A DNA stretch of 64,000 bases from Paraphysomonas bandaiensis (taxonomy: Eukaryota; Protista; Chrysophyceae): contig CBFFRP010000376.1 of assembly GCA_965644295.1 (NCBI GenBank), positions 182,285-246,284 on the forward strand. The letters are read 5' to 3'. A program made the position numbers and the translations under genes. This document shows, one piece after another, positions 15,967-64,000 of this stretch. Numbering within the stretch: the first letter of the stretch is position 1; each line of letters opens with the position of its first letter. The notes beneath the pieces are model-generated. The model had not been told where the DNA came from and made no database searches. It saw nothing but the letters and a program-made list of their open reading frames with translations.

Positions 15967-17757
15967 CTAGAGGCCGATAGCAGCAGCAAATTCAGGAGTG
16001 CATGCCGCAGGCGATTCAAACTTAAATGAATAGAAACATGTGGACGGTTCAGACGCCTCCAGCACTTTGTTTTCTGGTCCACACGATACCATCACCTCTG
16101 CAGATCGCGCTCCAAATGCATGGCAGTGAGTTCCCTTTTCAAACAGAAGTCGTGTGACGGGTACAACCTTTCCACTGCTATCTGGATGATCCAATGATTT
16201 AATCCCATTAGCGGGGTCGCTGAAGGTTCCTAGCATCACAGAATTACTCTTGCCCACCTCCTTTTGGTGAATCTTTCCCAGCATACACACCGTGTACACA
16301 AACGCCGCATCCGTGACGTCAAAACATTGTCCCTTGAGTGCCAAATAGGCCAAGTGTCCAGCGTATGTTCTACCATCTTCAACGTCCCGCTCAAACTCCC
16401 TACGGTTCTTTTTCAACTCTCTTTCTTGGTCCGAAGCCAGAGATAGAGCTTCCCGTGCTTCTACTGCTTCGGGGCGGGTATGCCCACGGAAATCTTTCTC
16501 CCTTAGTAAGTCGTCAATTGATTGGCCCACAGCACATATGTGAGGGAAAGGTTCAAAATCTGCAGGGCAGGTCTGAAGGTCAGGGGACGCTGCCCATTGC
16601 TGGTAGTACTCCTTGGCACCGGAGAGGGTACCAAACACTTCCTGGTGACCAAGCAACATCTGAATTTCCTGAGCGGCCCGACGGGAAAGTACAAGCTGCG
16701 TAAGAAACCTACGGACGGCATCCACTCCTCGACCAAGTGTGTTCGGAGCATCAGCATCGTACACAACACAAAGTGGGTGTATCCTCTCGTCAGTTGAGTG
16801 CTTAAGTAGTGGGCAGTTGATGGGGGTATACTGAGGCGATTGAAGTACCTTGTCATCCCCGTCCTCGGCTTCAACTGAATCAATAGGAGGGGTATCATAA
16901 TCATCTTCGTACGCATATACGTCGTCATCTATGTGGCTTCCATAGTCGACGGCATCGTGTGCGTCGTTGTGCTCAGTTGCAAATACTATGTCGTCTGCGT
17001 GCTTCACCATGTCACTGACATCCTCCTCGAGCATATCGAACAACGAAAAAAGAGTGGAAAGCATTGGCGCCAGAATATCTTCTCTCATTTTTGCTACTCC
17101 TATGATTTCACTTAAGCGTTGTAGTGCCTCACTTTTCATTTTTGAAACTTCCTCTTTCTCAATCGCCTCTTCACGTTCCACTGCCTCCCGAGCCAGCTGA
17201 ATTCCTTCAGAAATACGTTTAAGATCCGGATCCATTGTTTCCAAGGACTTTTTGCTTTTGTTAATTTTCTCCTCCATAGTTTTGATTAATTCTGAACGTA
17301 TCTTGGAACCAGCTGTGAAGGCAGCGCGTTGGCTTTCCAATGCCTTTCTCTCAGCAGCAGCTACAGCATCACAGTCGTTGGAACAACGTCCAACTGGTTC
17401 ATCTGACCCATCACAGCAATCACAAATGCCATCCTCAACGCGAGATGATGGAAGCTGAACAAGTTTGAAGCCTTTGTTTGCACATATGAAGGCCCCATGA
17501 GAGCACGCAGATGTTCCCGGCTCATCGGACCCATCCGCACAATCGCAGTAATCGTCATTCACCTTCTCAATCGGAAACACTTCATTGCCACATATGAATG
17601 AATTCCCTGTGTATTTGTCTTCATTATTCGGATTGGCTCCACGAACTCTGTCGTCTGACTGCACTGCAGCGGCTCCTCTCTTAGACAGCAGACTATTGAA
17701 CAGACCAGCCTCAGAGAGGCCGCAGAGGCTCAGGAGAGCAAAGTGAAATAACTTCAT
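15967..17757 (-). CDS. PRKCSH: Glucosidase II beta subunit (PRKCSH-like)
   Basis: Intronless 596-aa ORF with a signal peptide, the VNDDYCDCADGSDEPGTSAC and SSRVEDGICDCCDGSDE motifs, a coiled coil and a C-terminal MRH domain (CF..YTVC..GTHC..RSAEVMVSCG..EPSTCFY.FKFESPAAC). Confidence 0.93.
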   Translation of the reverse strand: MKLFHFALLSLCGLSEAGLFNSLLSKRGAAAVQSDDRVRGANPNNEDKYTGNSFICGNEVFPIEKVNDDYCDCADGSDEPGTSACSHGAFICANKGFKLVQLPSSRVEDGICDCCDGSDEPVGRCSNDCDAVAAAERKALESQRAAFTAGSKIRSELIKTMEEKINKSKKSLETMDPDLKRISEGIQLAREAVEREEAIEKEEVSKMKSEALQRLSEIIGVAKMREDILAPMLSTLFSLFDMLEEDVSDMVKHADDIVFATEHNDAHDAVDYGSHIDDDVYAYEDDYDTPPIDSVEAEDGDDKVLQSPQYTPINCPLLKHSTDERIHPLCVVYDADAPNTLGRGVDAVRRFLTQLVLSRRAAQEIQMLLGHQEVFGTLSGAKEYYQQWAASPDLQTCPADFEPFPHICAVGQSIDDLLREKDFRGHTRPEAVEAREALSLASDQERELKKNRREFERDVEDGRTYAGHLAYLALKGQCFDVTDAAFVYTVCMLGKIHQKEVGKSNSVMLGTFSDPANGIKSLDHPDSSGKVVPVTRLLFEKGTHCHAFGARSAEVMVSCGPENKVLEASEPSTCFYSFKFESPAACTPEFAAAIGL

Positions 17758-46110: not shown

Positions 46111-47080
46111 TTACATACTTCTTTGATGTTTCACACTGAATGCTGACGCCTTGGAAAGGGTACCAAAGACATGGTCCCAGACAGTGAAATACTCGCCAAA
46201 GTTCTTTGAGTTCGCTATATAATTCGAGTACTTATGATGATAGTCGTGATGCTCCACCCCAGCCCTAGGTGAAAAGTTTTTGAGGGTAAGTAGTGTGAGG
46301 AGTGTGGCAAAGCGAACAGCGAAGGCCTGCCAGAAAGTGCACCCTGAAAGATCAATTGAGCTGTAGGTCCGAAAGTCGAGTCGAATACCGCTGTGGTTCA
46401 TGACGTTGTCCAAGAGGCGCAAAGAAACGTACACCCAGTACGTGACTGGATGTGGGCTCACAAGAACTGCTGCAAATAGTATCGGGAGCCCCCCTTGAAG
46501 AGTTCCATCAATGGCATCGATACTGGCAGTGCTAATCGCGCTAGGTGTATCAATCTGGTGGTGATAGCTATGACAATACTTCCATAAAATATCACTCATG
46601 TGTTGAACGCGATGACCCCAATACAATGCAAAATCACCAAGTATGATAAGTAAGATAAGATCACCAACAAACTTATTCAAAGGTGGATGAAATTGCGTCG
46701 AGTTTCCAACTGGGAAAAAACATGAGCTGATTACAGCGCTTGATAACGCATTAACGAGAGCGGTCGGCCCAAACAGGGTAAATGCCACGTCAACTAACTG
46801 CTGATAGTGACTGAGTTTGTGATGAGTGTTTTGGATGCAATCATTTCGCGACTTGGACTTTCCATATCTTATCGTCGCATATTGGGCTTCACGAAGCCGC
46901 CCTGCTGTTTCAAATATAAACATGTAACTTATTAGACTTACATCTGCGACAACTATAGGGGCAATTCCCCAGCAGATCCAGTTGACGGTAGATATATTCG
47001 ATATAAACTGTAGAGTGATAACTGTTATATAACTAGAGAGCACACAGGAACTATACCGTCAACATATCTGCACAGTTCAT
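46111..47080 (-). CDS. Fatty acid hydroxylase / sterol desaturase superfamily membrane enzyme
   Basis: His boxes YWGHRVQH, HSYHH, NHSG and HHDYHH, plus NFGEYFTVWDHVFGT. A short first exon (47080-47057) is joined via a 49-nt GT-AG intron. Confidence 0.88.
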
Positions 47081-52500: not shown

Positions 52501-52643
52501 TTACTATCACACTATAGTAAAATGTGGATCTCTTTGGAAATAGCTCTCTAATCTCTACAGGAATATACTTATCTTATTGGAATATAACTAATAAACTGCT
52601 AATCTGTTTATAAAATAATTATCGAGTGCAGAGTGTGGTGGAA

Positions 52644-55600
52644 ATGGTGCACCCTAGAGTTGCCATCTTAATCATGGCATTAGGTGCATTTGCTATTGCC
52701 ACCAACGCACCTACATCATCACCTTCAGTTGACCCCTCATCCTGTCCTCAAGTTAGTAGTAATCATACGGATGTAATAGATATGGTAAATAAAATGCCAG
52801 TTAATAAGAAATGGTTAGAGGGTGGTTATGCCAGTGTAGATGACCAGGAGTGGGTCGCAGTGTCTACATCTGTCAGTACATTTTCTAACGCTAGTGTTTT
52901 TGTGAGTCTTCCGAATATTCCGGGAGAAACTTCATCTGATGGTTATCCTGCGATTGCCAGAGTTCGAAATGTCCAGACATTGTCTGGGACCGTAACTTTT
53001 GAGACTCGCATCTACCAAGCAAATGATAGTTACTGTTCGAAGGAGTGGGCGATACCAGAGCCTATATCCCCGGCAATGACACTATCTTGGTTAGTAGCTG
53101 AGCATGGCGTGTACAATGTTTCAAACAATATGTTTGTGGTTGGTGAAGGTCCAATTACCAGACAGGATAATGATCCCAGTAACAATGCTAATTTCGTTCG
53201 ATTCAATTTCCCGCCTGGATGTGAGTCATCGACAATATATTGTGCGTATCCGGAAGGTGTGGATGCTGGAGTGGTATTGCAGCTTCAGACGCTTGTGTAT
53301 GATCGTTTGTTGATTCCTCGGACTAGGAATGTTGGTCGTCGCTTCTTCCGAGCAGTGTTACAGCCGCATGATTCATCCGATCCGTCCTACTATGTGATGA
53401 ACGCTACAGCTGAAACTTTGGCCTACTTTTCGTTTGCGGATTCTGTTGCAATTAGTTGTGTTGAGGGTTTAACATTTGAGGGTGCTATATTTAACGGCGT
53501 GACTGATGTGAGACGGCATATTGACTTTCAATACACTTACTTGACTCTTCCTGGTATATTCGGCACAGTCGGGAGCTCCACTAGTTTGTCGGATTCGACT
53601 GGTTTGCGTGCATTTAATCGTACTACTACCGGCGCAAGTATCATTACCCAGGAAGATCAATGTGTGGACGAGGAAACTATTCACACGGCTGAGGAGACTG
53701 TGTTTACCTTTGTCGTTGGTGAGCAATCGCTGGCCTCGTCTTGCACGATCTGTAATGTTGCTTTCTCACCAACTGTGTTTAGTTCGCCCACGTCTTCTCC
53801 GTCGTTCGTTCCTAGCTTTTCACCGACACATACTCCGACTTTTATTCCTTCTAATTCGCCCACTTTTTCACCAACTTCTATTCCATCGAGCGGGCCTACT
53901 TTGAGCCCGACGAATGCACCCACCGTTTGTCCTACATGTGGACCTACTTCCTGTCCAACAGCTACGCCTTCTGTTTTACCTACTGTTGGACCTACACAAT
54001 GTCCAACTGGTGCTCCTACTTCTTTTCCGACGGCTGCACCTACTGCAAGCCCAACAGTTGCCCCCACCGGGTCGCCTACATTGAAGCCTACATCGAGCCC
54101 AACAGGTGCACCATCCGTGTCGCCAACATCTGGACCTACTGCAAGCCCAACAGTTGCCCCCACCGGTTCACCTACATTGGATCCTACATCTAGTCCGACG
54201 GTTATTCCCACTACTGCACCGTCAGTGTTGCCCACAACACCGAATACCACAATGACACCAACATTTGTTCCTACTACGTCACTTCCAACCGTGTCACCTA
54301 CAACATCTCCTACCTCTTCACCCACGTCGGAACCGTCGCAACAGCCTTCCGCTTCACCAAGTTTTGCTCCATCTGGTTCACCGACTTTGTCCCCCACATC
54401 TTCACCCACGTTGGAACCGTCCCATCAGCCTTCTGCTTCACCAAGTTTTGCTCCATCTGGTTCTCCAACTTTGTCCCCTACATCTTCACCCACGTCCTCT
54501 CCTACGATTACTCCTACAGTTGTGGAGACTCTCTCTCCTACAATCTCTAATAGCTCCTGTGGTGCTAAGGAGACAGGAGATTTGTATGATTTGGTCAGCA
54601 AAGAAGAGATTGTCAGTACCTGGCTAGAGGGTGGATTTGCTGGTGTTGATGACCAGGAGTGGGTGACAATATCTACATCTGTCAGTACATTTTCTAACGC
54701 TAGTGTTTTTGTGAGTCTTCCGAATATTCCGGGAGAAACTTCATCTGATGGTTATCCTGCGATTGCTAGAGTTCGAAATGTCCAGACATTGTCTGGGACC
54801 GTAACTTTTGAGACTCGCATCTACCAAGCAAATGATAGTTACTGTTCGAAGGAGTGGGCGATACCAGAGCCTATATCTCCGGCTTTGTCATTATCTTGGT
54901 TAGTAGTTGAACATGGTGCTTACAATTTATCAGGTAGTTTCTTTATTGTTGGTGAAGGTCCAATTACCAGACAGGATAATGATCCCACTAACAATGCTAA
55001 TTTCGTTCGATTCAATTTCCCGCCTGGATGTGAGTCATCGACAATATATTGTGCGTATCCGGAAGGTGTGGATGCTGGAGTGGTATTGCAGCTTCAGACG
55101 CTTGTGTATGATCGTTTGTTGATTCCTAGAACACTGGTAGTTGGTCGTCGCTTCTTCCGAGCAGTGTTGCAGCCGCATGATTCATCCGATCCGTCCTACT
55201 ATGTGATGAACGCTACAGCTGAAACTTTGGCCTACTTTTCGTTTGCGGATTCTGTTGCAATTAGTTGTGTTGAGGGTTTAACATTTGAGGGTGCTATATT
55301 TAACGGCGTGACTAATGTGAGACGTCATATTGACTTTCAATACACTTACTTGACTCTTCCTGGTATATTCGGCACAGTCGGGAGCTCCACTAGCTTGTCG
55401 GATTCGACTGGTTTGCGTGCATTTGATCGTACTACTACCGGCGCAAGTATCATTACCCAGGAAGATCAATGTGTGGACGAGGAAACTATTCACACGGCTG
55501 AGGAGACTGTGTTTACCTTTGTCGTTGGTGCCCAGGATGTCGTTTCTTCTTGTACTGTGTGTCGTGCGGTGTTTGTGCCGGAGTCATCAAGTCCGACATC

Positions 55601-58600
55601 AGTCCCATCGATATCATCTCAGCCCACTATTGGGCCATCCGCTAGTCCTTCATCGAATCCTACTTTGAGTCCGACCGATGTTCCAACTGTTAATCCTACC
55701 GTTTTACCAACACTTTCACCAACAGGATCGCCTACATCAGACCCAACACTCAACCCAACAGCATCCCCTACAGTATTTCCAACAGGGATTCCATCATCCA
55801 ATCCAACAGTGGCCCCAACTCCTTCACCAACAAGTGGGCCTACATTGGAGCCTACTGCCAGCCCAACAGGTGCACCTTCTGTTTCGCCAACATCTGGACC
55901 TACTGCAAGCCCAACAGTTGCCCCCACCGGGTCGCCTACTTTGAAGCCTACATCGAGCCCAACAGGTGCACCTTCCGTTTCACCAACATCTGGACCTACT
56001 GCAAGTCCAACAGTTGCCCCCACCGGTTCACCTACATTGGATCCTACATCTAGTCCGACGGTTATTCCCACTACTGCACCGTCAGTGTTGCCCACAACAC
56101 CGAATACCACAATGACACCAACATTTGTTCCTACTACGTCACTTCCAACCGTGTCACCTACAACATCTCCTACCTCTTCACCCACGTCGGAACCGTCGCA
56201 ACAGCCTTCCGCTTCACCAAGTTTTGCTCCATCTGGTTCACCGACTTTGTCCCCCACATCTTCACCCACGTTGGAACCGTCCCATCAGCCTTCTGCTTCA
56301 CCAAGTTTTGCTCCATCTGGTTCTCCAACTTTGTCCCCTACATCTTCACCCACGTCCTCTCCTACGATTACTCCTACAGTTGTGGAGACTCTCTCTCCTA
56401 CAATCTCTAATAGCTCCTGTGGTGCTAAGGAGACAGGAGATTTGTATGATTTGGTCAGCAAAGAAGAGATTGTCAGTACCTGGCTAGAGGGTGGATTTGC
56501 TGGTGTTGATGACCAGGAGTGGGTGACAATATCTACATCTGTCAGTACATTTTCTAACGCTAGTGTTTTTGTGAGTCTTCCGAATATTCCGGGAGAAACT
56601 TCATCTGATGGTTATCCTGCGATTGCTAGAGTTCGAAATGTCCAGACATTGTCTGGGACCGTGACTTTTGAGACTCGCATCTACCAAGCAAATGATAGTT
56701 ACTGTTCGAAGGAGTGGGCGATACCAGAGCCTATATCTCCGGCTTTGTCATTATCTTGGTTAGTAGTTGAACATGGTGCTTACAATTTATCAGGTAGTTT
56801 CTTTATTGTTGGTGAAGGTCCAATTACCAGACAGGATAATGATCCCACTAACAATGCTAATTTCGTTCGATTCAATTTCCCGCCTGGATGTGAGTCATCG
56901 ACAATATATTGTGCGTATCCGGAAGGTGTGGATGCTGGAGTGGTATTGCAGCTTCAGACGCTTGTGTATGATCGTTTGTTGATTCCTAGAACACTGGTAG
57001 TTGGTCGTCGCTTCTTCCGAGCAGTGTTGCAGCCGCATGATTCATCCGATCCGTCCTACTATGTGATGAACGCTACAGCTGAAACTTTGGCCTACTTTTC
57101 GTTTGCGGATTCTGTAGGTATTAGTTGTGTTGAGGGTTTAACATTTGAGGGTGCTATATTTAACGGCGTGACTAATGTGAGACGTCATATTGACTTTCAA
57201 TACACTTACTTGACTCTTCCTGGTATATTCGGCACAGTCGGGAGCTCCACTAGCTTGTCGGATTCGACTGGTTTGCGTGCATTTGATCGTACTACTACCG
57301 GCGCAAGTATCATTACCCAGGAAGATCAATGTGTGGACGAGGAAACTATTCACACGGCTGAGGAGACTGTGTTTACCTTTGTCGTTGGTGCCCAGGATGT
57401 CGTTTCTTCTTGTACTGTGTGTCGTGCGGTGTTTGTGCCGGAGTCATCAAGTCCGACATCAGTCCCATCGATATCATCTCAGCCCACTATTGGGCCATCC
57501 GCTAGTCCTTCATCGAATCCTACTTTGAGTCCGACCGATGTTCCAACTGTTAATCCTACCGTTTTACCAACACTTTCACCAACAGGATCGCCTACATCAG
57601 ACCCAACACTCAACCCAACAGCATCCCCTACAGTATTTCCAACAGGGATTCCATCATCCAATCCAACAGTGGCCCCAACTCCTTCACCAACAAGTGGGCC
57701 TACATTGGAGCCTACTGCCAGCCCAACAGGTGCACCTTCTGTTTCGCCAACATCTGGACCTACTGCAAGCCCAACAAGTGCACCTTCCGTTTCACCAACA
57801 TCTGGACCTACTGCAAGTCCAACAGTTGCCCCAATTCCTTCACCAACAAGTGGGCCTACATTGGAGCCTACTGCAAGCCCAACAGTTGCCCCCACCGGTT
57901 CACCTACATTGGAGCCTACATCGAGCCCAACAGGTGCACCTTCCGTTTCACCAACATCTGGTCCTACTGCAAGCCCAACAGTTGCCCCCACCTGTTCGCC
58001 TACATTGGAGCCTACATCGAGCCCAACAGGTGCACCTTCTGTTTCACCAACATCTGGTCCTACTGCAAGCCCAACAGTTGCCCCCACCTGTTCGCCTACA
58101 TTGGAGCCTACATCGAGCCCAACAGGTGCACCTTCTGTTTCGCCAACATCTGGTCCTACTGCAAGCCCAACAGTTGCCCCCACCGGTTCGCCTACATTGG
58201 AGCCTACATCGAGCCCAACAGGTACACCTTCTGTTTCGCCAACATCTGGTCCTACTGCAAGTCCAACAGTTGCCCCCACCGGTTCACCTACTTTGGAGCC
58301 TACATCGAGCCCAACAGGTGCACCTTCCGTTTCACCAACATCTGGACCTACTGCAAGTCCAACAGTTGCCCCCACCGGTTCACCTACATTGGATCCTACA
58401 TCTAGTCCGACGGTTATTCCCACTACTGCACCGTCAGTGTTGCCCACAACACCGAATACCACAATGACACCAACATTTGTTCCTACAACGTCACTTCCAA
58501 CCGTGTCACCTACAACATCTCCTACCTCTTCACCCACATCGGAACCGTCGCAACAGCCTTCCGCTTCACCAAGTTTTGCTCCATCTGGTTCTCCGACTTT

Positions 58601-61600
58601 GTCGCCCACATCTTCACCTACGTCGGAACCGTCCCTTCAGCCTTCCGCTTTACCAAGCTTTGCTCCATCTGGTTCTCCGACTTTGTCCCCTACATCTTCA
58701 CCCACATCGGAACCGTCGCAACAGCCTTCCGCTTCACCAAGTTTTGCTCCATCTGGTTCACCGACTTTGTCGCCCACATCTTCACCGACATCGGAGCCGT
58801 CCCATCAGCCTTCCGGTTCACCAAGCTTTGCTCCATCTAGTTCTCCAACTTTGTCCCCTACATGTTCACCCACGTTGGAACCGTCCCATCAGCCTTCCGC
58901 TTTACCAAGTTTTGCTCCATCTGGTTCTCCGACTTTGTCCCCTACATCTTCACCCACATCGGAACCGTCGCAACAGCCTTCCGCTTCACCAAGTGTTGCT
59001 CCATCTGGTTCTCCGACTTTGTCCCCCACATCTTCACCCACGTTGGAACCGTCCCATCAGCCTTCCGCTTCACCAAGTTTTGCTCCATCTGGTTCTCCAA
59101 CTTTGTCCCCTACATCTTCACCCACGTCCTCTCCTACGATTACTCCTACAGTTGTGGAGACTCTCTCTCCTACAATCTCTAATAGCTCCTGTGGTGCTAA
59201 GGAGACAGGAGATTTGTATGATTTGGTCAGCAAAGAAGAGATTGTCAGTACCTGGCTAGAGGGTGGATTTGCTGGTGTTGATGACCAGGAGTGGGTGACA
59301 ATATCTACATCTGTCAGTACATTTTCTAACGCTAGTGTTTTTGTGAGTCTTCCGAATATTCCGGGAGAAACTTCATCTGATGGTTATCCTGCGATTGCTA
59401 GAGTTCGAAATGTCCAGACATTGTCTGGGACCGTAACTTTTGAGACTCGCATCTACCAAGCAAATGATAGTTACTGTTCGAAGGAGTGGGCGATACCAGA
59501 GCCTATATCTCCGGCTTTGTCATTATCTTGGTTAGTAGTTGAACATGGTGCTTACAATTTATCAGGTAGTTTCTTTATTGTTGGTGAAGGTCCAATTACC
59601 AGACAGGATAATGATCCCACTAACAATGCTAATTTCGTTCGATTCAATTTCCCGCCTGGATGTGAGTCATCGACAATATATTGTGCGTATCCGGAAGGTG
59701 TGGATGCTGGAGTGGTATTGCAGCTTCAGACGCTTGTGTATGATCGTTTGTTGATTCCTAGAACACTGGTAGTTGGTCGTCGCTTCTTCCGAGCAGTGTT
59801 GCAGCCGCATGATTCATCCGATCCGTCCTACTATGTGATGAACGCTACAGCTGAAACTTTGGCCTACTTTTCGTTTGCGGATTCTGTTGCAATTAGTTGT
59901 GTTGAGGGTTTAACATTTGAGGGTGCTATATTTAACGGCGTGACTAATGTGAGACGTCATATTGACTTTCAATACACTTACTTGACTCTTCCTGGTATAT
60001 TCGGCACAGTCGGGAGCTCCACTAGCTTGTCGGATTCGACTGGTTTGCGTGCATTTGATCGTACTACTACCGGCGCAAGTATCATTACCCAGGAAGATCA
60101 ATGTGTGGACGAGGAAACTATTCACACGGCTGAGGAGACTGTGTTTACCTTTGTCGTTGGTGCCCAGGATGTCGTTTCTTCTTGTACTGTGTGTCGTGCG
60201 GTGTTTGTGCCGGAGTCATCAAGTCCGACATCAGTCCCATCGATATCATCTCAGCCCACTATTGGGCCATCCGCTAGTCCTTCATCGAATCCTACTTTGA
60301 GTCCGACCGATGTTCCAACTGTTAATCCTACCGTTTTACCAACACTTTCACCAACAGGATCGCCTACATCAGACCCAACACTCAACCCAACAGCATCCCC
60401 TACAGTATTTCCAACAGGGATTCCATCATCCAATCCAACAGTGGCCCCAACTCCTTCACCAACAAGTGGGCCTACATTGGAGCCTACTGCCAGCCCAACA
60501 GGTGCACCTTCTGTTTCGCCAACATCTGGACCTACTGCAAGCCCAACAGGTGCCCCCACCGGTTCACCTACATTGGATCCTACATCGAGCCCAACAGGTG
60601 CACCTTCTGTTTCGCCAACATCTGGTCCTACTGCAAGCCCAACAGTTGCCCCCACCGGTTCACCTACTTTGGAGCCTACATCGAGCCCAACAGGTGCGCC
60701 TTCCGTTTCACCAACATCTGGACCTACTGCAAGTCCAACAGTTGCCCCCACCAGTTCACCTACATTGGATCCTACATCTAGTCCGACGGTTATTCCCACT
60801 ACTGCACCGTCAGTGTTGCCCACAACACCGAATACCACATTAGCACCAACATTTGTTCCTACAACGTCACTTCCAACCGTGTCACCTACAACATCTCCTA
60901 CCTCTTCACCCACATCGGAACCGTCGCAACAGCCTTCCGCTTCACCAAGTTTTGCTCCATCTGGTTCTCCGACTTTGTCCCCCACATCTTCACCCACGTT
61001 GGAACCGTCCCATCAGCCTTCCGCTTCACCAAGTTTTGCTCCATCTGGTTCTCCAACTTTGTCCCCTACATCTTCACCCACGTCCTCTCCTACGATTACT
61101 CCTACAGTTGTGGAGACTCTCTCTCCTACAATCTCTAATAGCTCCTGTGGTGCTAAGGAGACAGGAGATTTGTATGATTTGGTCAGCAAAGAAGAGATTG
61201 TCAGTACCTGGCTAGAGGGTGGATTTGCTGGTGTTGATGACCAGGAGTGGGTGACAATATCTACATCTGTCAGTACATTTTCTAACGCTAGTGTTTTTGT
61301 GAGTCTTCCGAATATTCCGGGAGAAACTTCATCTGATGGTTATCCTGCGATTGCTAGAGTTCGAAATGTCCAGACATTGTCTGGGACCGTAACTTTTGAG
61401 ACTCGCATCTACCAAGCAAATGATAGTTACTGTTCGAAGGAGTGGGCGATACCAGAGCCTATATCTCCGGCTTTGTCATTATCTTGGTTAGTAGTTGAAC
61501 ATGGTGCTTACAATTTATCAGGTAGTTTCTTTATTGTTGGTGAAGGTCCAATTACCAGACAGGATAATGATCCCACTAACAATGCTAATTTCGTTCGATT

Positions 61601-64000
61601 CAATTTCCCGCCTGGATGTGAGTCATCGACAATATATTGTGCGTATCCGGAAGGTGTGGATGCTGGAGTGGTATTGCAGCTTCAGACGCTTGTGTATGAT
61701 CGTTTGTTGATTCCTAGAACACTGGTAGTTGGTCGTCGCTTCTTCCGAGCAGTGTTGCAGCCGCATGATTCATCCGATCCGTCCTACTATGTGATGAACG
61801 CTACAGCTGAAACTTTGGCCTACTTTTCGTTTGCGGATTCTGTTGCAATTAGTTGTGTTGAGGGTTTAACATTTGAGGGTGCTATATTTAACGGCGTGAC
61901 TGATGTGAGACGTCATATTGACTTTCAATACACTTACTTGACTCTTCCTGGTATATTCGGCACAGTCGGGAGCTCCACTAGCTTGTCGGATTCGACTGGT
62001 TTGCGTGCATTTGATCGTACTACTACCGGCGCAAGTATCATTACCCAGGAAGATCAATGTGTGGACGAGGAAACTATTCACACGGCTGAGGAGACTGTGT
62101 TTACCTTTGTCGTTGGTGCCCAGGATGTCGTTTCTTCTTGTACTGTGTGTCGTGCGGTGTTTGTGCCGGAGTCATCAAGTCCGACATCAGTCCCATCGAT
62201 ATCATCTCAGCCCACTATTGGGCCATCCGCTAGTCCTTCATCGAATCCTACTTTGAGTCCGACCGATGTTCCAACTGTTAATCCTACCGTTTTACCAACA
62301 CTTTCACCAACAGGATCGCCTACATCAGACCCAACACTCAACCCAACAGCATCCCCTACAGTATTTCCAACAGGGATTCCATCATCCAATCCAACAGTGG
62401 CCCCAACTCCTTCACCAACAAGTGGGCCTACATTGGAGCCTACTGCCAGCCCAACAGGTGCACCTTCTGTTTCGCCAACATCTGGACCTACTGCAAGCCC
62501 AACAGGTGCCCCCACCGGTTCACCTACATTGGAGCCTACATCGAGCCCAACAGGTGCACCTTCTGTTTCGCCAACATCTGGTCCTACTGCAAGCCCAACA
62601 GTTGCCCCCACCGGTTCACCTACTTTGGAGCCTACATCGAGCCCAACAGGTGCGCCTTCCGTTTCACCAACATCTGGACCTACTGCAAGTCCAACAGTTG
62701 CCCCCACCAGTTCACCTACATTGGATCCTACATCTAGTCCGACGGTTATTCCCACTACTGCACCGTCAGTGTTGCCCACAACACCGAATACCACATTAGC
62801 ACCAACATTTGTTCCTACAACGTCACTTCCAACCGTGTCACCTACAACATCTCCTACCTCTTCACCCACATCGGAACCGTCGCAACAGCCTTCCGCTTCA
62901 CCAAGTTTTGCTCCATCTGGTTCTCCGACTTTGTCCCCCACATCTTCACCCACGTTGGAACCGTCCCATCAGCCTTCCGCTTCACCAAGTTTTGCTCCAT
63001 CTGGTTCTCCAACTTTGTCCCCTACATCTTCACCCACGTCCTCTCCTACGATTACTCCTACAGTTGTGGAGACTCTCTCTCCTACAATCTCTAATAGCTC
63101 CTGTGGTGCTAAGGAGACAGGAGATTTGTATGATTTGGTCAGCAAAGAAGAGATTGTCAGTACCTGGCTAGAGGGTGGATTTGCTGGTGTTGATGACCAG
63201 GAGTGGGTGACAATATCTACATCTGTCAGTACATTTTCTAACGCTAGTGTTTTTGTGAGTCTTCCGAATATTCCGGGAGAAACTTCATCTGATGGTTATC
63301 CTGCGATTGCTAGAGTTCGAAATGTCCAGACATTGTCTGGGACCGTAACTTTTGAGACTCGCATCTACCAAGCAAATGATAGTTACTGTTCGAAGGAGTG
63401 GGCGATACCAGAGCCTATATCTCCGGCTTTGTCATTATCTTGGTTAGTAGTTGAACATGGTGCTTACAATTTATCAGGTAGTTTCTTTATTGTTGGTGAA
63501 GGTCCAATTACCAGACAGGATAATGATCCCACTAACAATGCTAATTTCGTTCGATTCAATTTCCCGCCTGGATGTGAGTCATCGACAATATATTGTGCGT
63601 ATCCGGAAGGTGTGGATGCTGGAGTGGTATTGCAGCTTCAGACGCTTGTGTATGATCGTTTGTTGATTCCTAGAACACTGGTAGTTGGTCGTCGCTTCTT
63701 CCGAGCAGTGTTGCAGCCGCATGATTCATCCGATCCGTCCTACTATGTGATGAACGCTACAGCTGAAACTTTGGCCTACTTTTCGTTTGCGGATTCTGTT
63801 GCAATTAGTTGTGTTGAGGGTTTAACATTTGAGGGTGCTATATTTAACGGCGTGACTAATGTGAGACGTCATATTGACTTTCAATACACTTACTTGACTC
63901 TTCCTGGTATATTCGGCACAGTCGGGAGCTCCACTAGCTTGTCGGATTCGACTGGTTTGCGTGCATTTGATCGTACTACTACCGGCGCAAGTATCATTAC
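52644..64000 (+). CDS. Giant secreted/surface adhesin-like protein: signal peptide plus at least 6 tandem [triple H-type-lectin-like module + P/T/S mucin-like spacer]; 3' end lies beyond the window
   Basis: ATG 52644 gives MVHPRVAILIMALGAFAIA (signal-like). The module-start WLEGG falls at 52812, 54621, 56481, 59253, 61209 and 63165, with spacings 1809, 1860, 2772, 1956 and 1956, all multiples of 3. I saw no stop in this frame, and the ORF track lists no terminated ORF in it. Confidence 0.88.
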   Translation, partial: MVHPRVAILIMALGAFAIATNAPTSSPSVDPSSCPQVSSNHTDVIDMVNKMPVNKKWLEGGYASVDDQEWVAVSTSVSTFSNASVFVSLPNIPGETSSDGYPAIARVRNVQTLSGTVTFETRIYQANDSYCSKEWAIPEPISPAMTLSWLVAEHGVYNVSNNMFVVGEGPITRQDNDPSNNANFVRFNFPPGCESSTIYCAYPEGVDAGVVLQLQTLVYDRLLIPRTRNVGRRFFRAVLQPHDSSDPSYYVMNATAETLAYFSFADSVAISCVEGLTFEGAIFNGVTDVRRHIDFQYTYLTLPGIFGTVGSSTSLSDSTGLRAFNRTTTGASIITQEDQCVDEETIHTAEETVFTFVVGEQSLASSCTICNVAFSPTVFSSPTSSPSFVPSFSPTHTPTFIPSNSPTFSPTSIPSSGPTLSPTNAPTVCPTCGPTSCPTATPSVLPTVGPTQCPTGAPTSFPTAAPTASPTVAPTGSPTLKPTSSPTGAPSVSPTSGPTASPTVAPTGSPTLDPTSSPTVIPTTAPSVLPTTPNTTMTPTFVPTTSLPTVSPTTSPTSSPTSEPSQQPSASPSFAPSGSPTLSPTSSPTLEPSHQPSASPSFAPSGSPTLSPTSSPTSSPTITPTVVETLSPTISNSSCGAKETGDLYDLVSKEEIVSTWLEGGFAGVDDQEWVTISTSVSTFSNASVFVSLPNIPGETSSDGYPAIARVRNVQTLSGTVTFETRIYQANDSYCSKEWAIPEPISPALSLSWLVVEHGAYNLSGSFFIVGEGPITRQDNDPTNNANFVRFNFPPGCESSTIYCAYPEGVDAGVVLQLQTLVYDRLLIPRTLVVGRRFFRAVLQPHDSSDPSYYVMNATAETLAYFSFADSVAISCVEGLTFEGAIFNGVTNVRRHIDFQYTYLTLPGIFGTVGSSTSLSDSTGLRAFDRTTTGASIITQEDQCVDEETIHTAEETVFTFVVGAQDVVSSCTVCRAVFVPESSSPTSVPSISSQPTIGPSASPSSNPTLSPTDVPTVNPTVLPTLSPTGSPTSDPTLNPTASPTVFPTGIPSSNPTVAPTPSPTSGPTLEPTASPTGAPSVSPTSGPTASPTVAPTGSPTLKPTSSPTGAPSVSPTSGPTASPTVAPTGSPTLDPTSSPTVIPTTAPSVLPTTPNTTMTPTFVPTTSLPTVSPTTSPTSSPTSEPSQQPSASPSFAPSGSPTLSPTSSPTLEPSHQPSASPSFAPSGSPTLSPTSSPTSSPTITPTVVETLSPTISNSSCGAKETGDLYDLVSKEEIVSTWLEGGFAGVDDQEWVTISTSVSTFSNASVFVSLPNIPGETSSDGYPAIARVRNVQTLSGTVTFETRIYQANDSYCSKEWAIPEPISPALSLSWLVVEHGAYNLSGSFFIVGEGPITRQDNDPTNNANFVRFNFPPGCESSTIYCAYPEGVDAGVVLQLQTLVYDRLLIPRTLVVGRRFFRAVLQPHDSSDPSYYVMNATAETLAYFSFADSVGISCVEGLTFEGAIFNGVTNVRRHIDFQYTYLTLPGIFGTVGSSTSLSDSTGLRAFDRTTTGASIITQEDQCVDEETIHTAEETVFTFVVGAQDVVSSCTVCRAVFVPESSSPTSVPSISSQPTIGPSASPSSNPTLSPTDVPTVNPTVLPTLSPTGSPTSDPTLNPTASPTVFPTGIPSSNPTVAPTPSPTSGPTLEPTASPTGAPSVSPTSGPTASPTSAPSVSPTSGPTASPTVAPIPSPTSGPTLEPTASPTVAPTGSPTLEPTSSPTGAPSVSPTSGPTASPTVAPTCSPTLEPTSSPTGAPSVSPTSGPTASPTVAPTCSPTLEPTSSPTGAPSVSPTSGPTASPTVAPTGSPTLEPTSSPTGTPSVSPTSGPTASPTVAPTGSPTLEPTSSPTGAPSVSPTSGPTASPTVAPTGSPTLDPTSSPTVIPTTAPSVLPTTPNTTMTPTFVPTTSLPTVSPTTSPTSSPTSEPSQQPSASPSFAPSGSPTLSPTSSPTSEPSLQPSALPSFAPSGSPTLSPTSSPTSEPSQQPSASPSFAPSGSPTLSPTSSPTSEPSHQPSGSPSFAPSSSPTLSPTCSPTLEPSHQPSALPSFAPSGSPTLSPTSSPTSEPSQQPSASPSVAPSGSPTLSPTSSPTLEPSHQPSASPSFAPSGSPTLSPTSSPTSSPTITPTVVETLSPTISNSSCGAKETGDLYDLVSKEEIVSTWLEGGFAGVDDQEWVTISTSVSTFSNASVFVSLPNIPGETSSDGYPAIARVRNVQTLSGTVTFETRIYQANDSYCSKEWAIPEPISPALSLSWLVVEHGAYNLSGSFFIVGEGPITRQDNDPTNNANFVRFNFPPGCESSTIYCAYPEGVDAGVVLQLQTLVYDRLLIPRTLVVGRRFFRAVLQPHDSSDPSYYVMNATAETLAYFSFADSVAISCVEGLTFEGAIFNGVTNVRRHIDFQYTYLTLPGIFGTVGSSTSLSDSTGLRAFDRTTTGASIITQEDQCVDEETIHTAEETVFTFVVGAQDVVSSCTVCRAVFVPESSSPTSVPSISSQPTIGPSASPSSNPTLSPTDVPTVNPTVLPTLSPTGSPTSDPTLNPTASPTVFPTGIPSSNPTVAPTPSPTSGPTLEPTASPTGAPSVSPTSGPTASPTGAPTGSPTLDPTSSPTGAPSVSPTSGPTASPTVAPTGSPTLEPTSSPTGAPSVSPTSGPTASPTVAPTSSPTLDPTSSPTVIPTTAPSVLPTTPNTTLAPTFVPTTSLPTVSPTTSPTSSPTSEPSQQPSASPSFAPSGSPTLSPTSSPTLEPSHQPSASPSFAPSGSPTLSPTSSPTSSPTITPTVVETLSPTISNSSCGAKETGDLYDLVSKEEIVSTWLEGGFAGVDDQEWVTISTSVSTFSNASVFVSLPNIPGETSSDGYPAIARVRNVQTLSGTVTFETRIYQANDSYCSKEWAIPEPISPALSLSWLVVEHGAYNLSGSFFIVGEGPITRQDNDPTNNANFVRFNFPPGCESSTIYCAYPEGVDAGVVLQLQTLVYDRLLIPRTLVVGRRFFRAVLQPHDSSDPSYYVMNATAETLAYFSFADSVAISCVEGLTFEGAIFNGVTDVRRHIDFQYTYLTLPGIFGTVGSSTSLSDSTGLRAFDRTTTGASIITQEDQCVDEETIHTAEETVFTFVVGAQDVVSSCTVCRAVFVPESSSPTSVPSISSQPTIGPSASPSSNPTLSPTDVPTVNPTVLPTLSPTGSPTSDPTLNPTASPTVFPTGIPSSNPTVAPTPSPTSGPTLEPTASPTGAPSVSPTSGPTASPTGAPTGSPTLEPTSSPTGAPSVSPTSGPTASPTVAPTGSPTLEPTSSPTGAPSVSPTSGPTASPTVAPTSSPTLDPTSSPTVIPTTAPSVLPTTPNTTLAPTFVPTTSLPTVSPTTSPTSSPTSEPSQQPSASPSFAPSGSPTLSPTSSPTLEPSHQPSASPSFAPSGSPTLSPTSSPTSSPTITPTVVETLSPTISNSSCGAKETGDLYDLVSKEEIVSTWLEGGFAGVDDQEWVTISTSVSTFSNASVFVSLPNIPGETSSDGYPAIARVRNVQTLSGTVTFETRIYQANDSYCSKEWAIPEPISPALSLSWLVVEHGAYNLSGSFFIVGEGPITRQDNDPTNNANFVRFNFPPGCESSTIYCAYPEGVDAGVVLQLQTLVYDRLLIPRTLVVGRRFFRAVLQPHDSSDPSYYVMNATAETLAYFSFADSVAISCVEGLTFEGAIFNGVTNVRRHIDFQYTYLTLPGIFGTVGSSTSLSDSTGLRAFDRTTTGASII
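52812..64000 (+). repeat. Intragenic tandem macro-repeat (1.8-2.8 kb units) with nested 96-bp and 84-bp minisatellites
   Basis: Near-identical ~0.9-kb module DNA in units 2-6. The 84-bp unit (EPSQQPSASPSFAPSGSPTLSPTSSPTL) occurs 2x in most spacers and 7x in spacer 3 (58541-59045). The 96-bp unit (SPTGAPSVSPTSGPTASPTVAPTGSPTLEPTS) varies in copy number. Confidence 0.95.

What the first reader, a model, noticed from the sequence alone, without database searches (positions are those of the whole stretch)
52644..64000. Hidden >3785-aa intronless beads-on-a-string surface protein: lectin-like modules on mucin-like stalks
Seen in the sequence: a continuous frame that the ORF track misses because it has no stop in the window. 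It has a hydrophobic N-terminal signal and at least 6 copies of a ~305-aa Cys-containing globular module with N-glycosylation sequons (NAS, NDS, NLS/NVS, NAT). Each module is separated by about 300-620 aa of xPTx/xPSx tetrapeptide spacer. It lacks introns, unlike most neighbouring genes. Inference: a multivalent extracellular glycan-binding filament with evenly spaced binding heads on O-glycosylated rods, for example a prey-capture adhesin, a lorica/stalk/scale matrix protein, or a cell-coat protein. I do not recognise this architecture as a described protist system.
Basis: partly seen in the sequence, partly recalled or inferred. Interest (0 to 1): 0.9.

Follow-up and report, generated by a model that had tools for sequence, protein, structure and literature searches.

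The report
Lectin-like head array of giant REJ receptor
The 11-kb open frame is real and is most likely the outer half of a roughly 9,000-11,000-residue cell-surface receptor of a marine protist, carrying repeated sugar-binding-like heads on mucin-like stalks above a polycystin/egg-jelly-receptor (REJ) type membrane base; it is one of about ninety such giant genes in this genome.

Summary
Window 52644-64000 is one stop-free frame of 3,785 codons with a signal peptide, six ~335-aa Cys-containing modules and five Pro/Thr/Ser spacers. The frame stops because contig C376 ends there, not only the window. Contig C543 begins in the same repeat unit, in frame and 99.7-99.8% identical. It continues for 4,886 codons: three more modules, a second Cys-rich domain, a PT stalk, LRRs, a REJ domain (E 6.8e-42) and 7-8 predicted membrane helices. 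A 61-78% identical paralogue on C109 has all of this on one contig, apart from one frame break inside a module. So this is probably the ectodomain of a membrane receptor of at least ~8,950 aa, not a free filament. The module has no Pfam family. It folds with high confidence (pLDDT 95.6) as three beta-sandwiches that resemble H-type lectins and phage receptor-binding tips. Sugar binding is inferred, not shown. RNA-library contigs cover the frame without indels. The genome has at least 88 such modules and at least 91 REJ matches. It has silicon transporters, and searches for light-harvesting and PsbO genes found none. The scan had already met this receptor family on other DNA of this genome (s1-436755). 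I rate it a new variant of a known kind.

The parts
52644..52700 (+). Start codon and predicted ER signal peptide (aa 1-19, ending A-I-A)
   Evidence: The in-frame stop at 52611-52613 bounds the ORF upstream. This is the only hydrophobic segment of the window part. The cleavage site is inferred from the sequence; no signal-peptide predictor was available.
52743..53753 (+). Module 1 (aa 34-370), the divergent first head, 86-87% identical to modules 2-6
53754..54557 (+). PT/PS spacer 1 (268 aa, 68% P+T+S)
   Evidence: the 84-bp minisatellite is shown
54558..55562 (+). Module 2 (aa 639-973). This is the copy that was modelled: three H-type-lectin-like beta-sandwich subdomains.
   Evidence: AF2 gave pLDDT 95.6 and pTM 0.93. 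The three-fold motif is shown.
55563..56417 (+). PT/PS spacer 2 (285 aa)
56418..57422 (+). Module 3 (aa 1259-1593)
57423..59189 (+). PT/PS spacer 3 (589 aa). It is lengthened by 7.2 copies each of a 96-bp and an 84-bp in-frame repeat.
59190..60194 (+). Module 4 (aa 2183-2517), 100% identical to module 2
60195..61145 (+). PT/PS spacer 4 (317 aa)
61146..62150 (+). Module 5 (aa 2835-3169)
62151..63101 (+). PT/PS spacer 5 (317 aa)
63102..64000 (+). Module 6, cut after about 299 aa by the end of contig C376 (which is also the window end)

Best explanation
Window 52644-64000 encodes the signal peptide and the first six heads of a giant type-I-oriented, multi-pass membrane receptor. The near-identical 1.9-2.8-kb tandem units broke the assembly, so the gene is split. 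The rest lies on contig C543, minus strand: three more heads, a second Cys-rich domain, a ~700-aa PT stalk, LRRs, a REJ domain, an EGF-like Cys-rich stretch and 7-8 membrane helices. The total is at least ~8,950 aa, and more if units are missing in the gap. Each head is one chain of three H-type-lectin-like beta-sandwiches packed as a pseudo-trimer, the arrangement that true H-type lectins reach with three chains. The proposed mechanism is inferred. The heads bind surface glycans multivalently. The Pro/Thr/Ser spacers, probably O-glycosylated and extended, hold them tens to hundreds of nanometres from the membrane. Occupancy is passed to the REJ/membrane base, as in sea-urchin REJ receptors and polycystin-1. 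Shown here: the ORF, the repeats, the fold, the REJ and LRR domains on C543, the paralogue architecture, and presence in RNA libraries. Inferred: the join of the two contigs, sugar binding, O-glycosylation and signalling.
For: The ORF and its repeats are shown. Contig C376 ends at the window end. C543(-) starts in frame in the same unit and runs 4,886 codons to a stop. Its nt 127-1400 are 99.7-99.8% identical to the window units. Copies of the module DNA at 94% identity or more exist only on C376 and C543, both at contig ends. On C543 the REJ domain PF02010 scores E 6.8e-42, with LRR_1/LRR_8 also present and membrane helices predicted. The C109 paralogue carries heads, Cys domain, PT, LRR, REJ and TM collinearly on one contig, 61% identical over the C-terminal 2,300 aa. 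Module and REJ share one open frame in at least 10 ORFs. The module model has pLDDT 95.6. VIA-align matches residues 230-325 to R2 pyocin fibre, AP22 gp53, discoidin I, SLL-2 and HPA at Z 3.6-4.9 and rmsd 2.1-2.6. The other two thirds match tailspike C-terminal domains, and the whole model matches single-chain TNF/C1q pseudo-trimers. ESM Atlas gives TM 0.85/0.89 over 316 aa to a bacterial cluster in which 11% of members carry H_lectin. Language-model features score 0.97 to H_lectin clusters. Viral tail fibres also match. Profile alignments of the three subdomains place the motifs YQANDS, LQPHDS and TQEDQC in equivalent positions, and these are among the most conserved columns. RNA-library contigs lie on the frame with 0-5 differences and no indels.
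Against: No read or contig was shown to bridge C376 and C543, so the join rests on identity, frame and exclusivity. Pfam H_lectin does not match: the best result is E 0.066 in 1 of 66 members. The PDB fold matches are modest (Z below 5), and the Foldseek PDB search found nothing at E 1e-3 or better. Ligand-binding residues could not be compared. Pfam finds no GPS, PLAT or PKD-channel domain in the C543 part, so a polycystin-like signalling mechanism is only an analogy. RNA evidence comes from assembled contigs of RNA libraries. These cannot exclude DNA carry-over, and they do not cover the unique 5' end.
Confidence: 0.62

Rival explanations
1. It is the same giant REJ-type membrane receptor, but the heads are not lectins. 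They would bind proteins or other ligands as C1q/TNF-like pseudo-trimers do, or serve only as rigid structural beads.
For: The whole model also aligns, weakly, with single-chain APRIL-BAFF and C1q heads and the PCSK9 C-terminal domain. There is no significant Pfam H_lectin match. The fold occurs in phage receptor-binding proteins with varied ligands.
Against: The best structural neighbours are H-type lectins and clusters partly annotated H_lectin. The conserved acidic/His motif repeated three times suits a polar ligand site.
Confidence: 0.2
2. It is a secreted or wall-bound multivalent filament. The C376 gene would end in unassembled sequence without a membrane part, and C543 would belong to a second, very recent paralogue.
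For: No bridging read was obtained. Depth of the module piece in DNA run X1 is about 9.4 times that of the unique 5' flank, against 6 exact copies in the assembly. So unassembled copies exist and could belong to another gene.
Against: Both contigs end inside the same unit, in the same frame, at 99.7-99.8% identity. No third contig holds copies at 94% identity or more. C543 lacks an N-terminus and C376 lacks a C-terminus. The C109 paralogue and at least 9 other ORFs combine module and REJ in one frame.
Confidence: 0.12
3. It is a non-functional relic or an assembly artefact of a collapsed or expanded repeat, and no protein is made from it.
For: The units are near-identical, so copy number and spacer lengths in the assembly are unreliable. 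The paralogue on C109 has a frame break inside a module.
Against: There are 3,785 + 4,886 codons without a stop. No indels appear in contigs from four independent runs, two of them on record as RNA libraries (X11, X18) and one more guessed to be RNA. Motifs are conserved across 66 family members at 24-87% identity.
Confidence: 0.04

Closest known systems
Sea-urchin receptors for egg jelly (suREJ1/REJ family) and human PKDREJ
   Same: Both have carbohydrate-recognition heads N-terminal to a REJ domain, followed by one or several membrane helices. suREJ1 binds a sulfated fucose polymer (as summarised in PMC4700764). The REJ domain is found on the proposed continuation at E 6.8e-42.
   Different: The heads here are triple H-type-lectin-like modules rather than C-type lectin domains. 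They are repeated at least nine times on 270-590-aa PT stalks. The protein is about five to seven times longer. Pfam detects no GPS or channel domain.
Polycystin-1 (PKD1)
   Same: Both have an LRR region, a lectin-type domain, a REJ domain and a multi-pass membrane base in one giant surface protein.
   Different: There is no PLAT domain and no PKD-channel domain. About 7-8 helices are predicted instead of 11. There is no sequence match to any solved polycystin chain.
H-type lectins (Helix pomatia agglutinin, discoidin I/II C-terminal domain, coral SLL-2; Pfam PF09458) and the lectin-like tips of R-type pyocin and phage tail fibres
   Same: The beta-sandwich fold of each module third is shared (Z 3.6-4.9, rmsd 2.1-2.6 A over 77-87 residues). 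The three-fold arrangement is also shared.
   Different: Here the three sandwiches are fused in one chain. The Pfam model does not match. Ligand residues were not compared.
Bacterial ~328-aa proteins of an ESM Atlas cluster (11% of members carry Pfam H_lectin), and H_lectin fusions to reprolysin, Big and glycosyl-hydrolase domains
   Same: The whole three-subdomain module superposes (TM 0.85/0.89, 316 residues, rmsd 2.4 A; TM ~0.7 for the fusions).
   Different: No sequence-level link was found. The bacterial proteins carry single modules, not arrays on stalks.
Ectocarpus Esi0130_0068 (male-gamete REJ protein)
   Same: It is a stramenopile surface protein with a REJ domain and 6-7 predicted helices (PMC4700764).
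   Different: It is 1,427 aa, has no lectin heads, and has a GPS and channel-like match. Homology of the membrane parts was not tested here.
Mucins and PT-repeat (PF04886) surface proteins
   Same: The spacers are 68-69% Pro/Thr/Ser and are built from in-frame minisatellites. Family members hit Pfam PT.
   Different: The spacers here only separate folded heads. Glycosylation was not shown.

Membership tests
H-type lectin (Pfam PF09458) | Significant match to the family's sequence profile | tested here: not met
   The module has no Pfam hit at E up to 1. The PF09458 HMM finds nothing in the genome. Only 1 of 66 family members reaches E 0.066.
H-type lectin (Pfam PF09458) | Six-stranded antiparallel beta-sandwich fold assembled three-fold | tested here: met
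   The model has pLDDT 95.6. Matches to HPA 2ccv, discoidin I 2w94 and SLL-2 3wmp score Z 3.6-4.0, and pyocin/phage tips score Z 4.9. Atlas clusters partly annotated H_lectin give TM 0.70-0.85. The Z values are modest, so this is a fold-level statement only.
H-type lectin (Pfam PF09458) | GalNAc/Gal-binding residues at the interface between protomers | not testable with these tools
   No residue-level superposition was available. Only a conserved polar motif repeated three times was seen.
REJ-domain receptors (Pfam PF02010) | REJ domain in the extracellular part | tested here: met
   E 6.8e-42 over profile positions 14-398 of 452, on the C543 continuation and not inside the window. It belongs to this gene only if the contigs join.
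Polycystin-1 family | GPS/GAIN autoproteolysis domain before the first helix | tested here: inconclusive
   There is no Pfam GPS match at E up to 10. A Cys-rich stretch precedes the first helix. Another agent of this scan reports GAIN in a paralogue (s1-436755); I did not check that.
Polycystin-1 family | PLAT domain in the first cytoplasmic loop and 11 helices, with a channel-like last six | tested here: not met
   There is no PLAT or PKD_channel match. Hydropathy gives 7-8 candidate helices. There is no match to solved polycystin chains.
Mucin-like PTS domain | Long tracts dominated by Pro, Thr and Ser built from tandem repeats | tested here: met
   Each of the five spacers is 68-69% P+T+S. 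In-frame repeats of 48/96 bp and 84 bp are present.
Mucin-like PTS domain | Dense O-glycosylation | not testable with these tools
   This needs glycoproteomics.

The most novel reading that the evidence does not exclude
The roughly ninety giant REJ-based receptors of this apparently heterotrophic, silicon-transporting protist would form a germline-encoded recognition repertoire for prey, particles or mates. Each would carry interchangeable heads; this scan's unchecked notes report LRR and NHL heads on other members. In this member, tandem arrays of single-chain H-lectin pseudo-trimers, a module shape otherwise seen in bacteria and phage receptor-binding proteins, would give high-avidity binding to foreign surface glycans. 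Rapid unit gain and loss would tune reach and avidity.
Probability: 0.2. Interest if true: 0.85.

Novelty: new variant of a known kind. Interest (0 to 1): 0.62.

Why it matters
Surface receptors of free-living marine protists are almost unknown, and how phagotrophic flagellates tell prey, mates or particles apart is an open question. This gene gives a concrete, expressible candidate: a ~335-aa module with a confident predicted fold and no Pfam family. A single-sequence search of 1.84 billion protein cluster representatives found only 216 matches. The few hits that carry a taxon label are stramenopile (Paraphysomonas, and one Bacillariophyta-labelled Atlas cluster). The module sits in arrays on a REJ-type membrane base, within a family of about ninety giant genes. 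It also shows that the lectin-above-REJ design, known from animal sperm receptors and polycystin-1, has been built independently with a different lectin fold. Practically, near-identical 2-kb units break assemblies and hide such genes from ORF and gene callers.

Tried and rejected
- Pfam on modules 1 and 2 gave nothing, and Pfam on all 66 aligned members gave only sub-threshold hints.
- A profile search of PDB sequences with the module alignment gave nothing, and phmmer of the REJ-to-end part against PDB gave nothing.
- Single-sequence AlphaFold gave pLDDT 33 and was useless. It was replaced by the 66-sequence alignment.
- Foldseek against PDB gave no match at E 1e-3 or better.
- The PF09458 HMM over the genome gave no match, and its control set did not ring either.
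- A profile search for bacterial relatives found only unnamed environmental sequences and two eukaryote-transcriptome entries, one labelled Paraphysomonas; none was labelled bacterial.
- Pfam at E up to 10 on the second Cys-rich domain, the pre-REJ region, the post-REJ region and the membrane region found nothing usable. The Atlas features of the membrane part matched only unnamed clusters.
- Naming the organism failed. Cluster and contig look-ups are masked or unnamed. Homologues of a neighbouring housekeeping gene are 47% identical or less and unnamed. The rRNA search failed.
- A choanoflagellate origin was considered and rejected because only 3 SH2 matches were found.
- A diatom origin was considered at first and dropped because searches for light-harvesting and PsbO genes found none. 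This is absence of a match, not proof.
- Literature searches for REJ or H-type lectins in diatoms or stramenopiles gave only the Ectocarpus papers.
- Bacterial promoter/terminator scans are irrelevant for this eukaryote.
- The join of the contigs could not be tested with reads.

Full report
**Observation.** Translating window 52644-64000 on the + strand gives 3,785 codons without a stop. An in-frame stop lies 33 nt upstream of the ATG. The first 19 residues form the only strongly hydrophobic segment of this part and end in A-I-A, as an ER signal peptide would.

Six copies of a Cys-containing module are present, anchored at aa 57, 660, 1280, 2204, 2856 and 3508. The NAS, NDS, NLS/NVS and NAT sequons recur in each. 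By my boundaries the modules are about 335 aa. The five spacers are 268, 285, 589, 317 and 317 aa, and each is 68-69% Pro+Thr+Ser. The spacers are built from in-frame repeats of 48/96 bp and 84 bp. Both repeats reach 7.2 copies in the long third spacer, which agrees with the scan note s1-456604.

Modules 2-5 are 99.4-100% identical, and the unit period is 1,860, 2,772, 1,956 and 1,956 bp. An 11-kb stop-free frame cannot arise by chance. The antisense and off-frame ORFs listed over the spacers are by-products of the biased composition.

**The frame is cut by the assembly.** The window is G000:C376:182285-246284, and contig C376 ends at the window's last base. Contig C543 (23,054 bp) read on its minus strand starts in frame inside the same spacer and runs 4,886 codons to a stop. 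Its nt 127-1400 are 99.7-99.8% identical to the window's units.

Copies of the module DNA at 94% identity or more occur only on C376 and C543, and both arrays abut a contig end. C376 stops 917 nt into a unit, and C543 starts 204 nt before a module. So at least about 836 nt (279 aa) are missing.

In DNA run X1 the module piece has about 9.4 times the depth of the unique 5' flank, against six exact copies in the assembly. That hints at roughly three unassembled units. The tool warns that such depths are not copy numbers. I could not obtain a bridging read.

**What the continuation holds.** In order, the C543 frame has:
- three more modules, 82-100% identical to module 2;
- a second Cys-rich domain of about 280 aa with no Pfam match;
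- about 700 aa of PT stalk with ~100-aa repeats;
- LRRs (LRR_1 at E 7e-9, LRR_8 at E 1e-7);
- about 540 aa with no Pfam match;
- a REJ domain (PF02010, E 6.8e-42);
- an EGF-like Cys-rich stretch;
- seven or eight hydrophobic helices between residues 4,058 and 4,752, followed by a ~130-aa tail.

No GPS, PLAT or PKD-channel domain is detected, and no solved structure matches by sequence.

The membrane part has only eight detectable homologues in the protein collection, under that search's word and length filters. They are 22-48% identical, and seven of them carry REJ.

**Paralogues support the single-gene model.** The paralogue on C109 has the same order of parts on one contig. It is 61% identical over the last ~2,300 residues, and its modules are 72-78% identical. 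It has one frame break inside a module. Module and REJ lie in one open frame in at least ten ORFs. I therefore read the window's frame as the N-terminal ectodomain of a membrane receptor of at least about 8,950 aa, with about 0.8 confidence in the join.

**The module.** It has no Pfam family and no PDB sequence match. HMMER against 1.84 billion cluster representatives finds only 216 proteins at E 1e-3 or better. The best has eight modules in 4,092 aa and comes from a marine metagenome contig. The only named source in a profile search is a Paraphysomonas transcriptome.

With a 66-sequence alignment, AlphaFold gives pLDDT 95.6 and pTM 0.93 for an all-beta fold. VIA-align matches residues 230-325 to several H-type-lectin-like structures:

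| Structure | Z |
|---|---|
| R2 pyocin fibre tip | 4.9 (rmsd 2.1 A over 85 residues) |
| Phage AP22 gp53 | 4.9 |
| Discoidin I | 4.0 |
| SLL-2 | 3.9 |
| Helix pomatia agglutinin | 3.6 |

Residues 19-119 and 120-231 match tailspike C-terminal domains. The whole model weakly matches single-chain TNF-like and C1q pseudo-trimers and the PCSK9 C-terminal domain.

The ESM Atlas search gives TM 0.85/0.89 over 316 residues to a bacterial 328-aa cluster in which 11% of members carry Pfam H_lectin. It gives TM about 0.7 to bacterial H_lectin fusion proteins. Language-model features point the same way (0.97). Viral tail fibres also match.

Profile-profile alignment of the three thirds is weak (E 2.4e-4 and 0.015). 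It does put the motifs YQANDS, LQPHDS and TQEDQC, each preceded by a conserved Arg, in register. These motifs are among the most conserved columns of the family.

So each head is a single-chain pseudo-trimer of H-type-lectin-like sandwiches, as scan note s1-456038 guessed. Membership of PF09458 by sequence is not met. The resemblance is at fold level with modest Z, and sugar binding is inferred.

**Expression and integrity.** Twenty public runs from twelve studies hold parts of the 5' 2 kb, six of them on record as RNA. Contigs laid from a marine metatranscriptome (X11) and a transcriptome (X18) match well. One is 1,094 nt at 54437-55530 with no differences, and another is 871 nt at 55000-55869 with three differences. 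No insertion or deletion appears in any of the four runs. These are assembled contigs, so DNA carry-over cannot be excluded. The unique 5' end is covered only by DNA run X1 and by run X9, whose kind is a guess.

**Genome context.** The genome has at least 88 module copies in about 25 giant open frames. It has at least 91 REJ matches, mostly in uninterrupted frames of 2,000-7,900 aa. This agrees with the follow-up report s1-436755 of this scan on another member, which counted about ninety genes.

Silicon transporters are present. Searches for light-harvesting and PsbO genes found none, and only three SH2 domains were found. The organism is therefore probably a heterotrophic, silicifying protist. 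A stramenopile near the chrysophytes is my best guess, and it could not be named.

**Mechanism, known relatives and novelty.** The design works like the sea-urchin egg-jelly receptors and polycystin-1: carbohydrate-recognition heads and LRRs sit above a REJ domain and a multi-pass membrane base (PMC4700764). Four things differ here:
- the lectin fold, a fused H-type-like trimer with no Pfam family;
- its repetition at least nine times on mucin-like stalks;
- the size of the protein;
- the lack of detectable PLAT, channel and GPS domains.

I found no paper describing such receptors in diatoms or chrysophytes. I rate it a new variant of a known kind. Function in prey, mate or particle recognition is a hypothesis only.

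Noticed in passing
G000 genome-wide (e.g. C378:241865-243100, C608:15544-16872, C578:50988-52184): There are at least 91 REJ-domain matches, most in uninterrupted open frames of 2,000-7,900 aa. This is a very large family of giant REJ receptors in a 62.6-Mb genome.
   Followed up: partly
G000:C109:53766-53815 (loci L035): The closest paralogue has a frame change inside a module, with a 756-aa frame overlapping the start of a 5,626-aa frame. It could be an assembly error, a short intron or a broken gene.
   Followed up: no
G000:C380:30-9423: There is a tandem array of at least eight more distant modules (45-58% identical) with a period of about 1,257 bp. Each sits in its own open frame of 270-487 aa rather than in one long frame.
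   Followed up: no
G000 genome-wide: Silicon-transporter genes are present on at least seven contigs. Searches with the chlorophyll a/b-binding and PsbO families found no match at all. The organism looks like a non-photosynthetic silicifier.
   Followed up: partly
G000:C352, C152, C143, C399: Weak cadherin-repeat matches are clustered in four further giant open frames of 3,000-4,600 aa.
   Followed up: no
window 15967-17757 (-) and 46111-47043 (-): Two neighbouring genes were identified. One is a glucosidase II beta subunit, an uninterrupted 596-aa ORF identical to a protein held under JGI/IMG and MMETSP. The other ORF carries a fatty-acid hydroxylase domain.
   Followed up: partly
window 53725 to 56503, and 56165 to 56322: One contig of run X9 joins these places, skipping 2,777 and 156 nt. 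This could be a strain with fewer units or shorter spacers, or an assembly-graph artefact in the repeat. The sides are only 29-30 nt.
   Followed up: no
L009 (C543) residues about 1,340-1,615 of the continued frame: A second Cys-rich globular domain lies between the last head and the long PT stalk. It is conserved in the C109 paralogue and has no Pfam match.
   Followed up: partly
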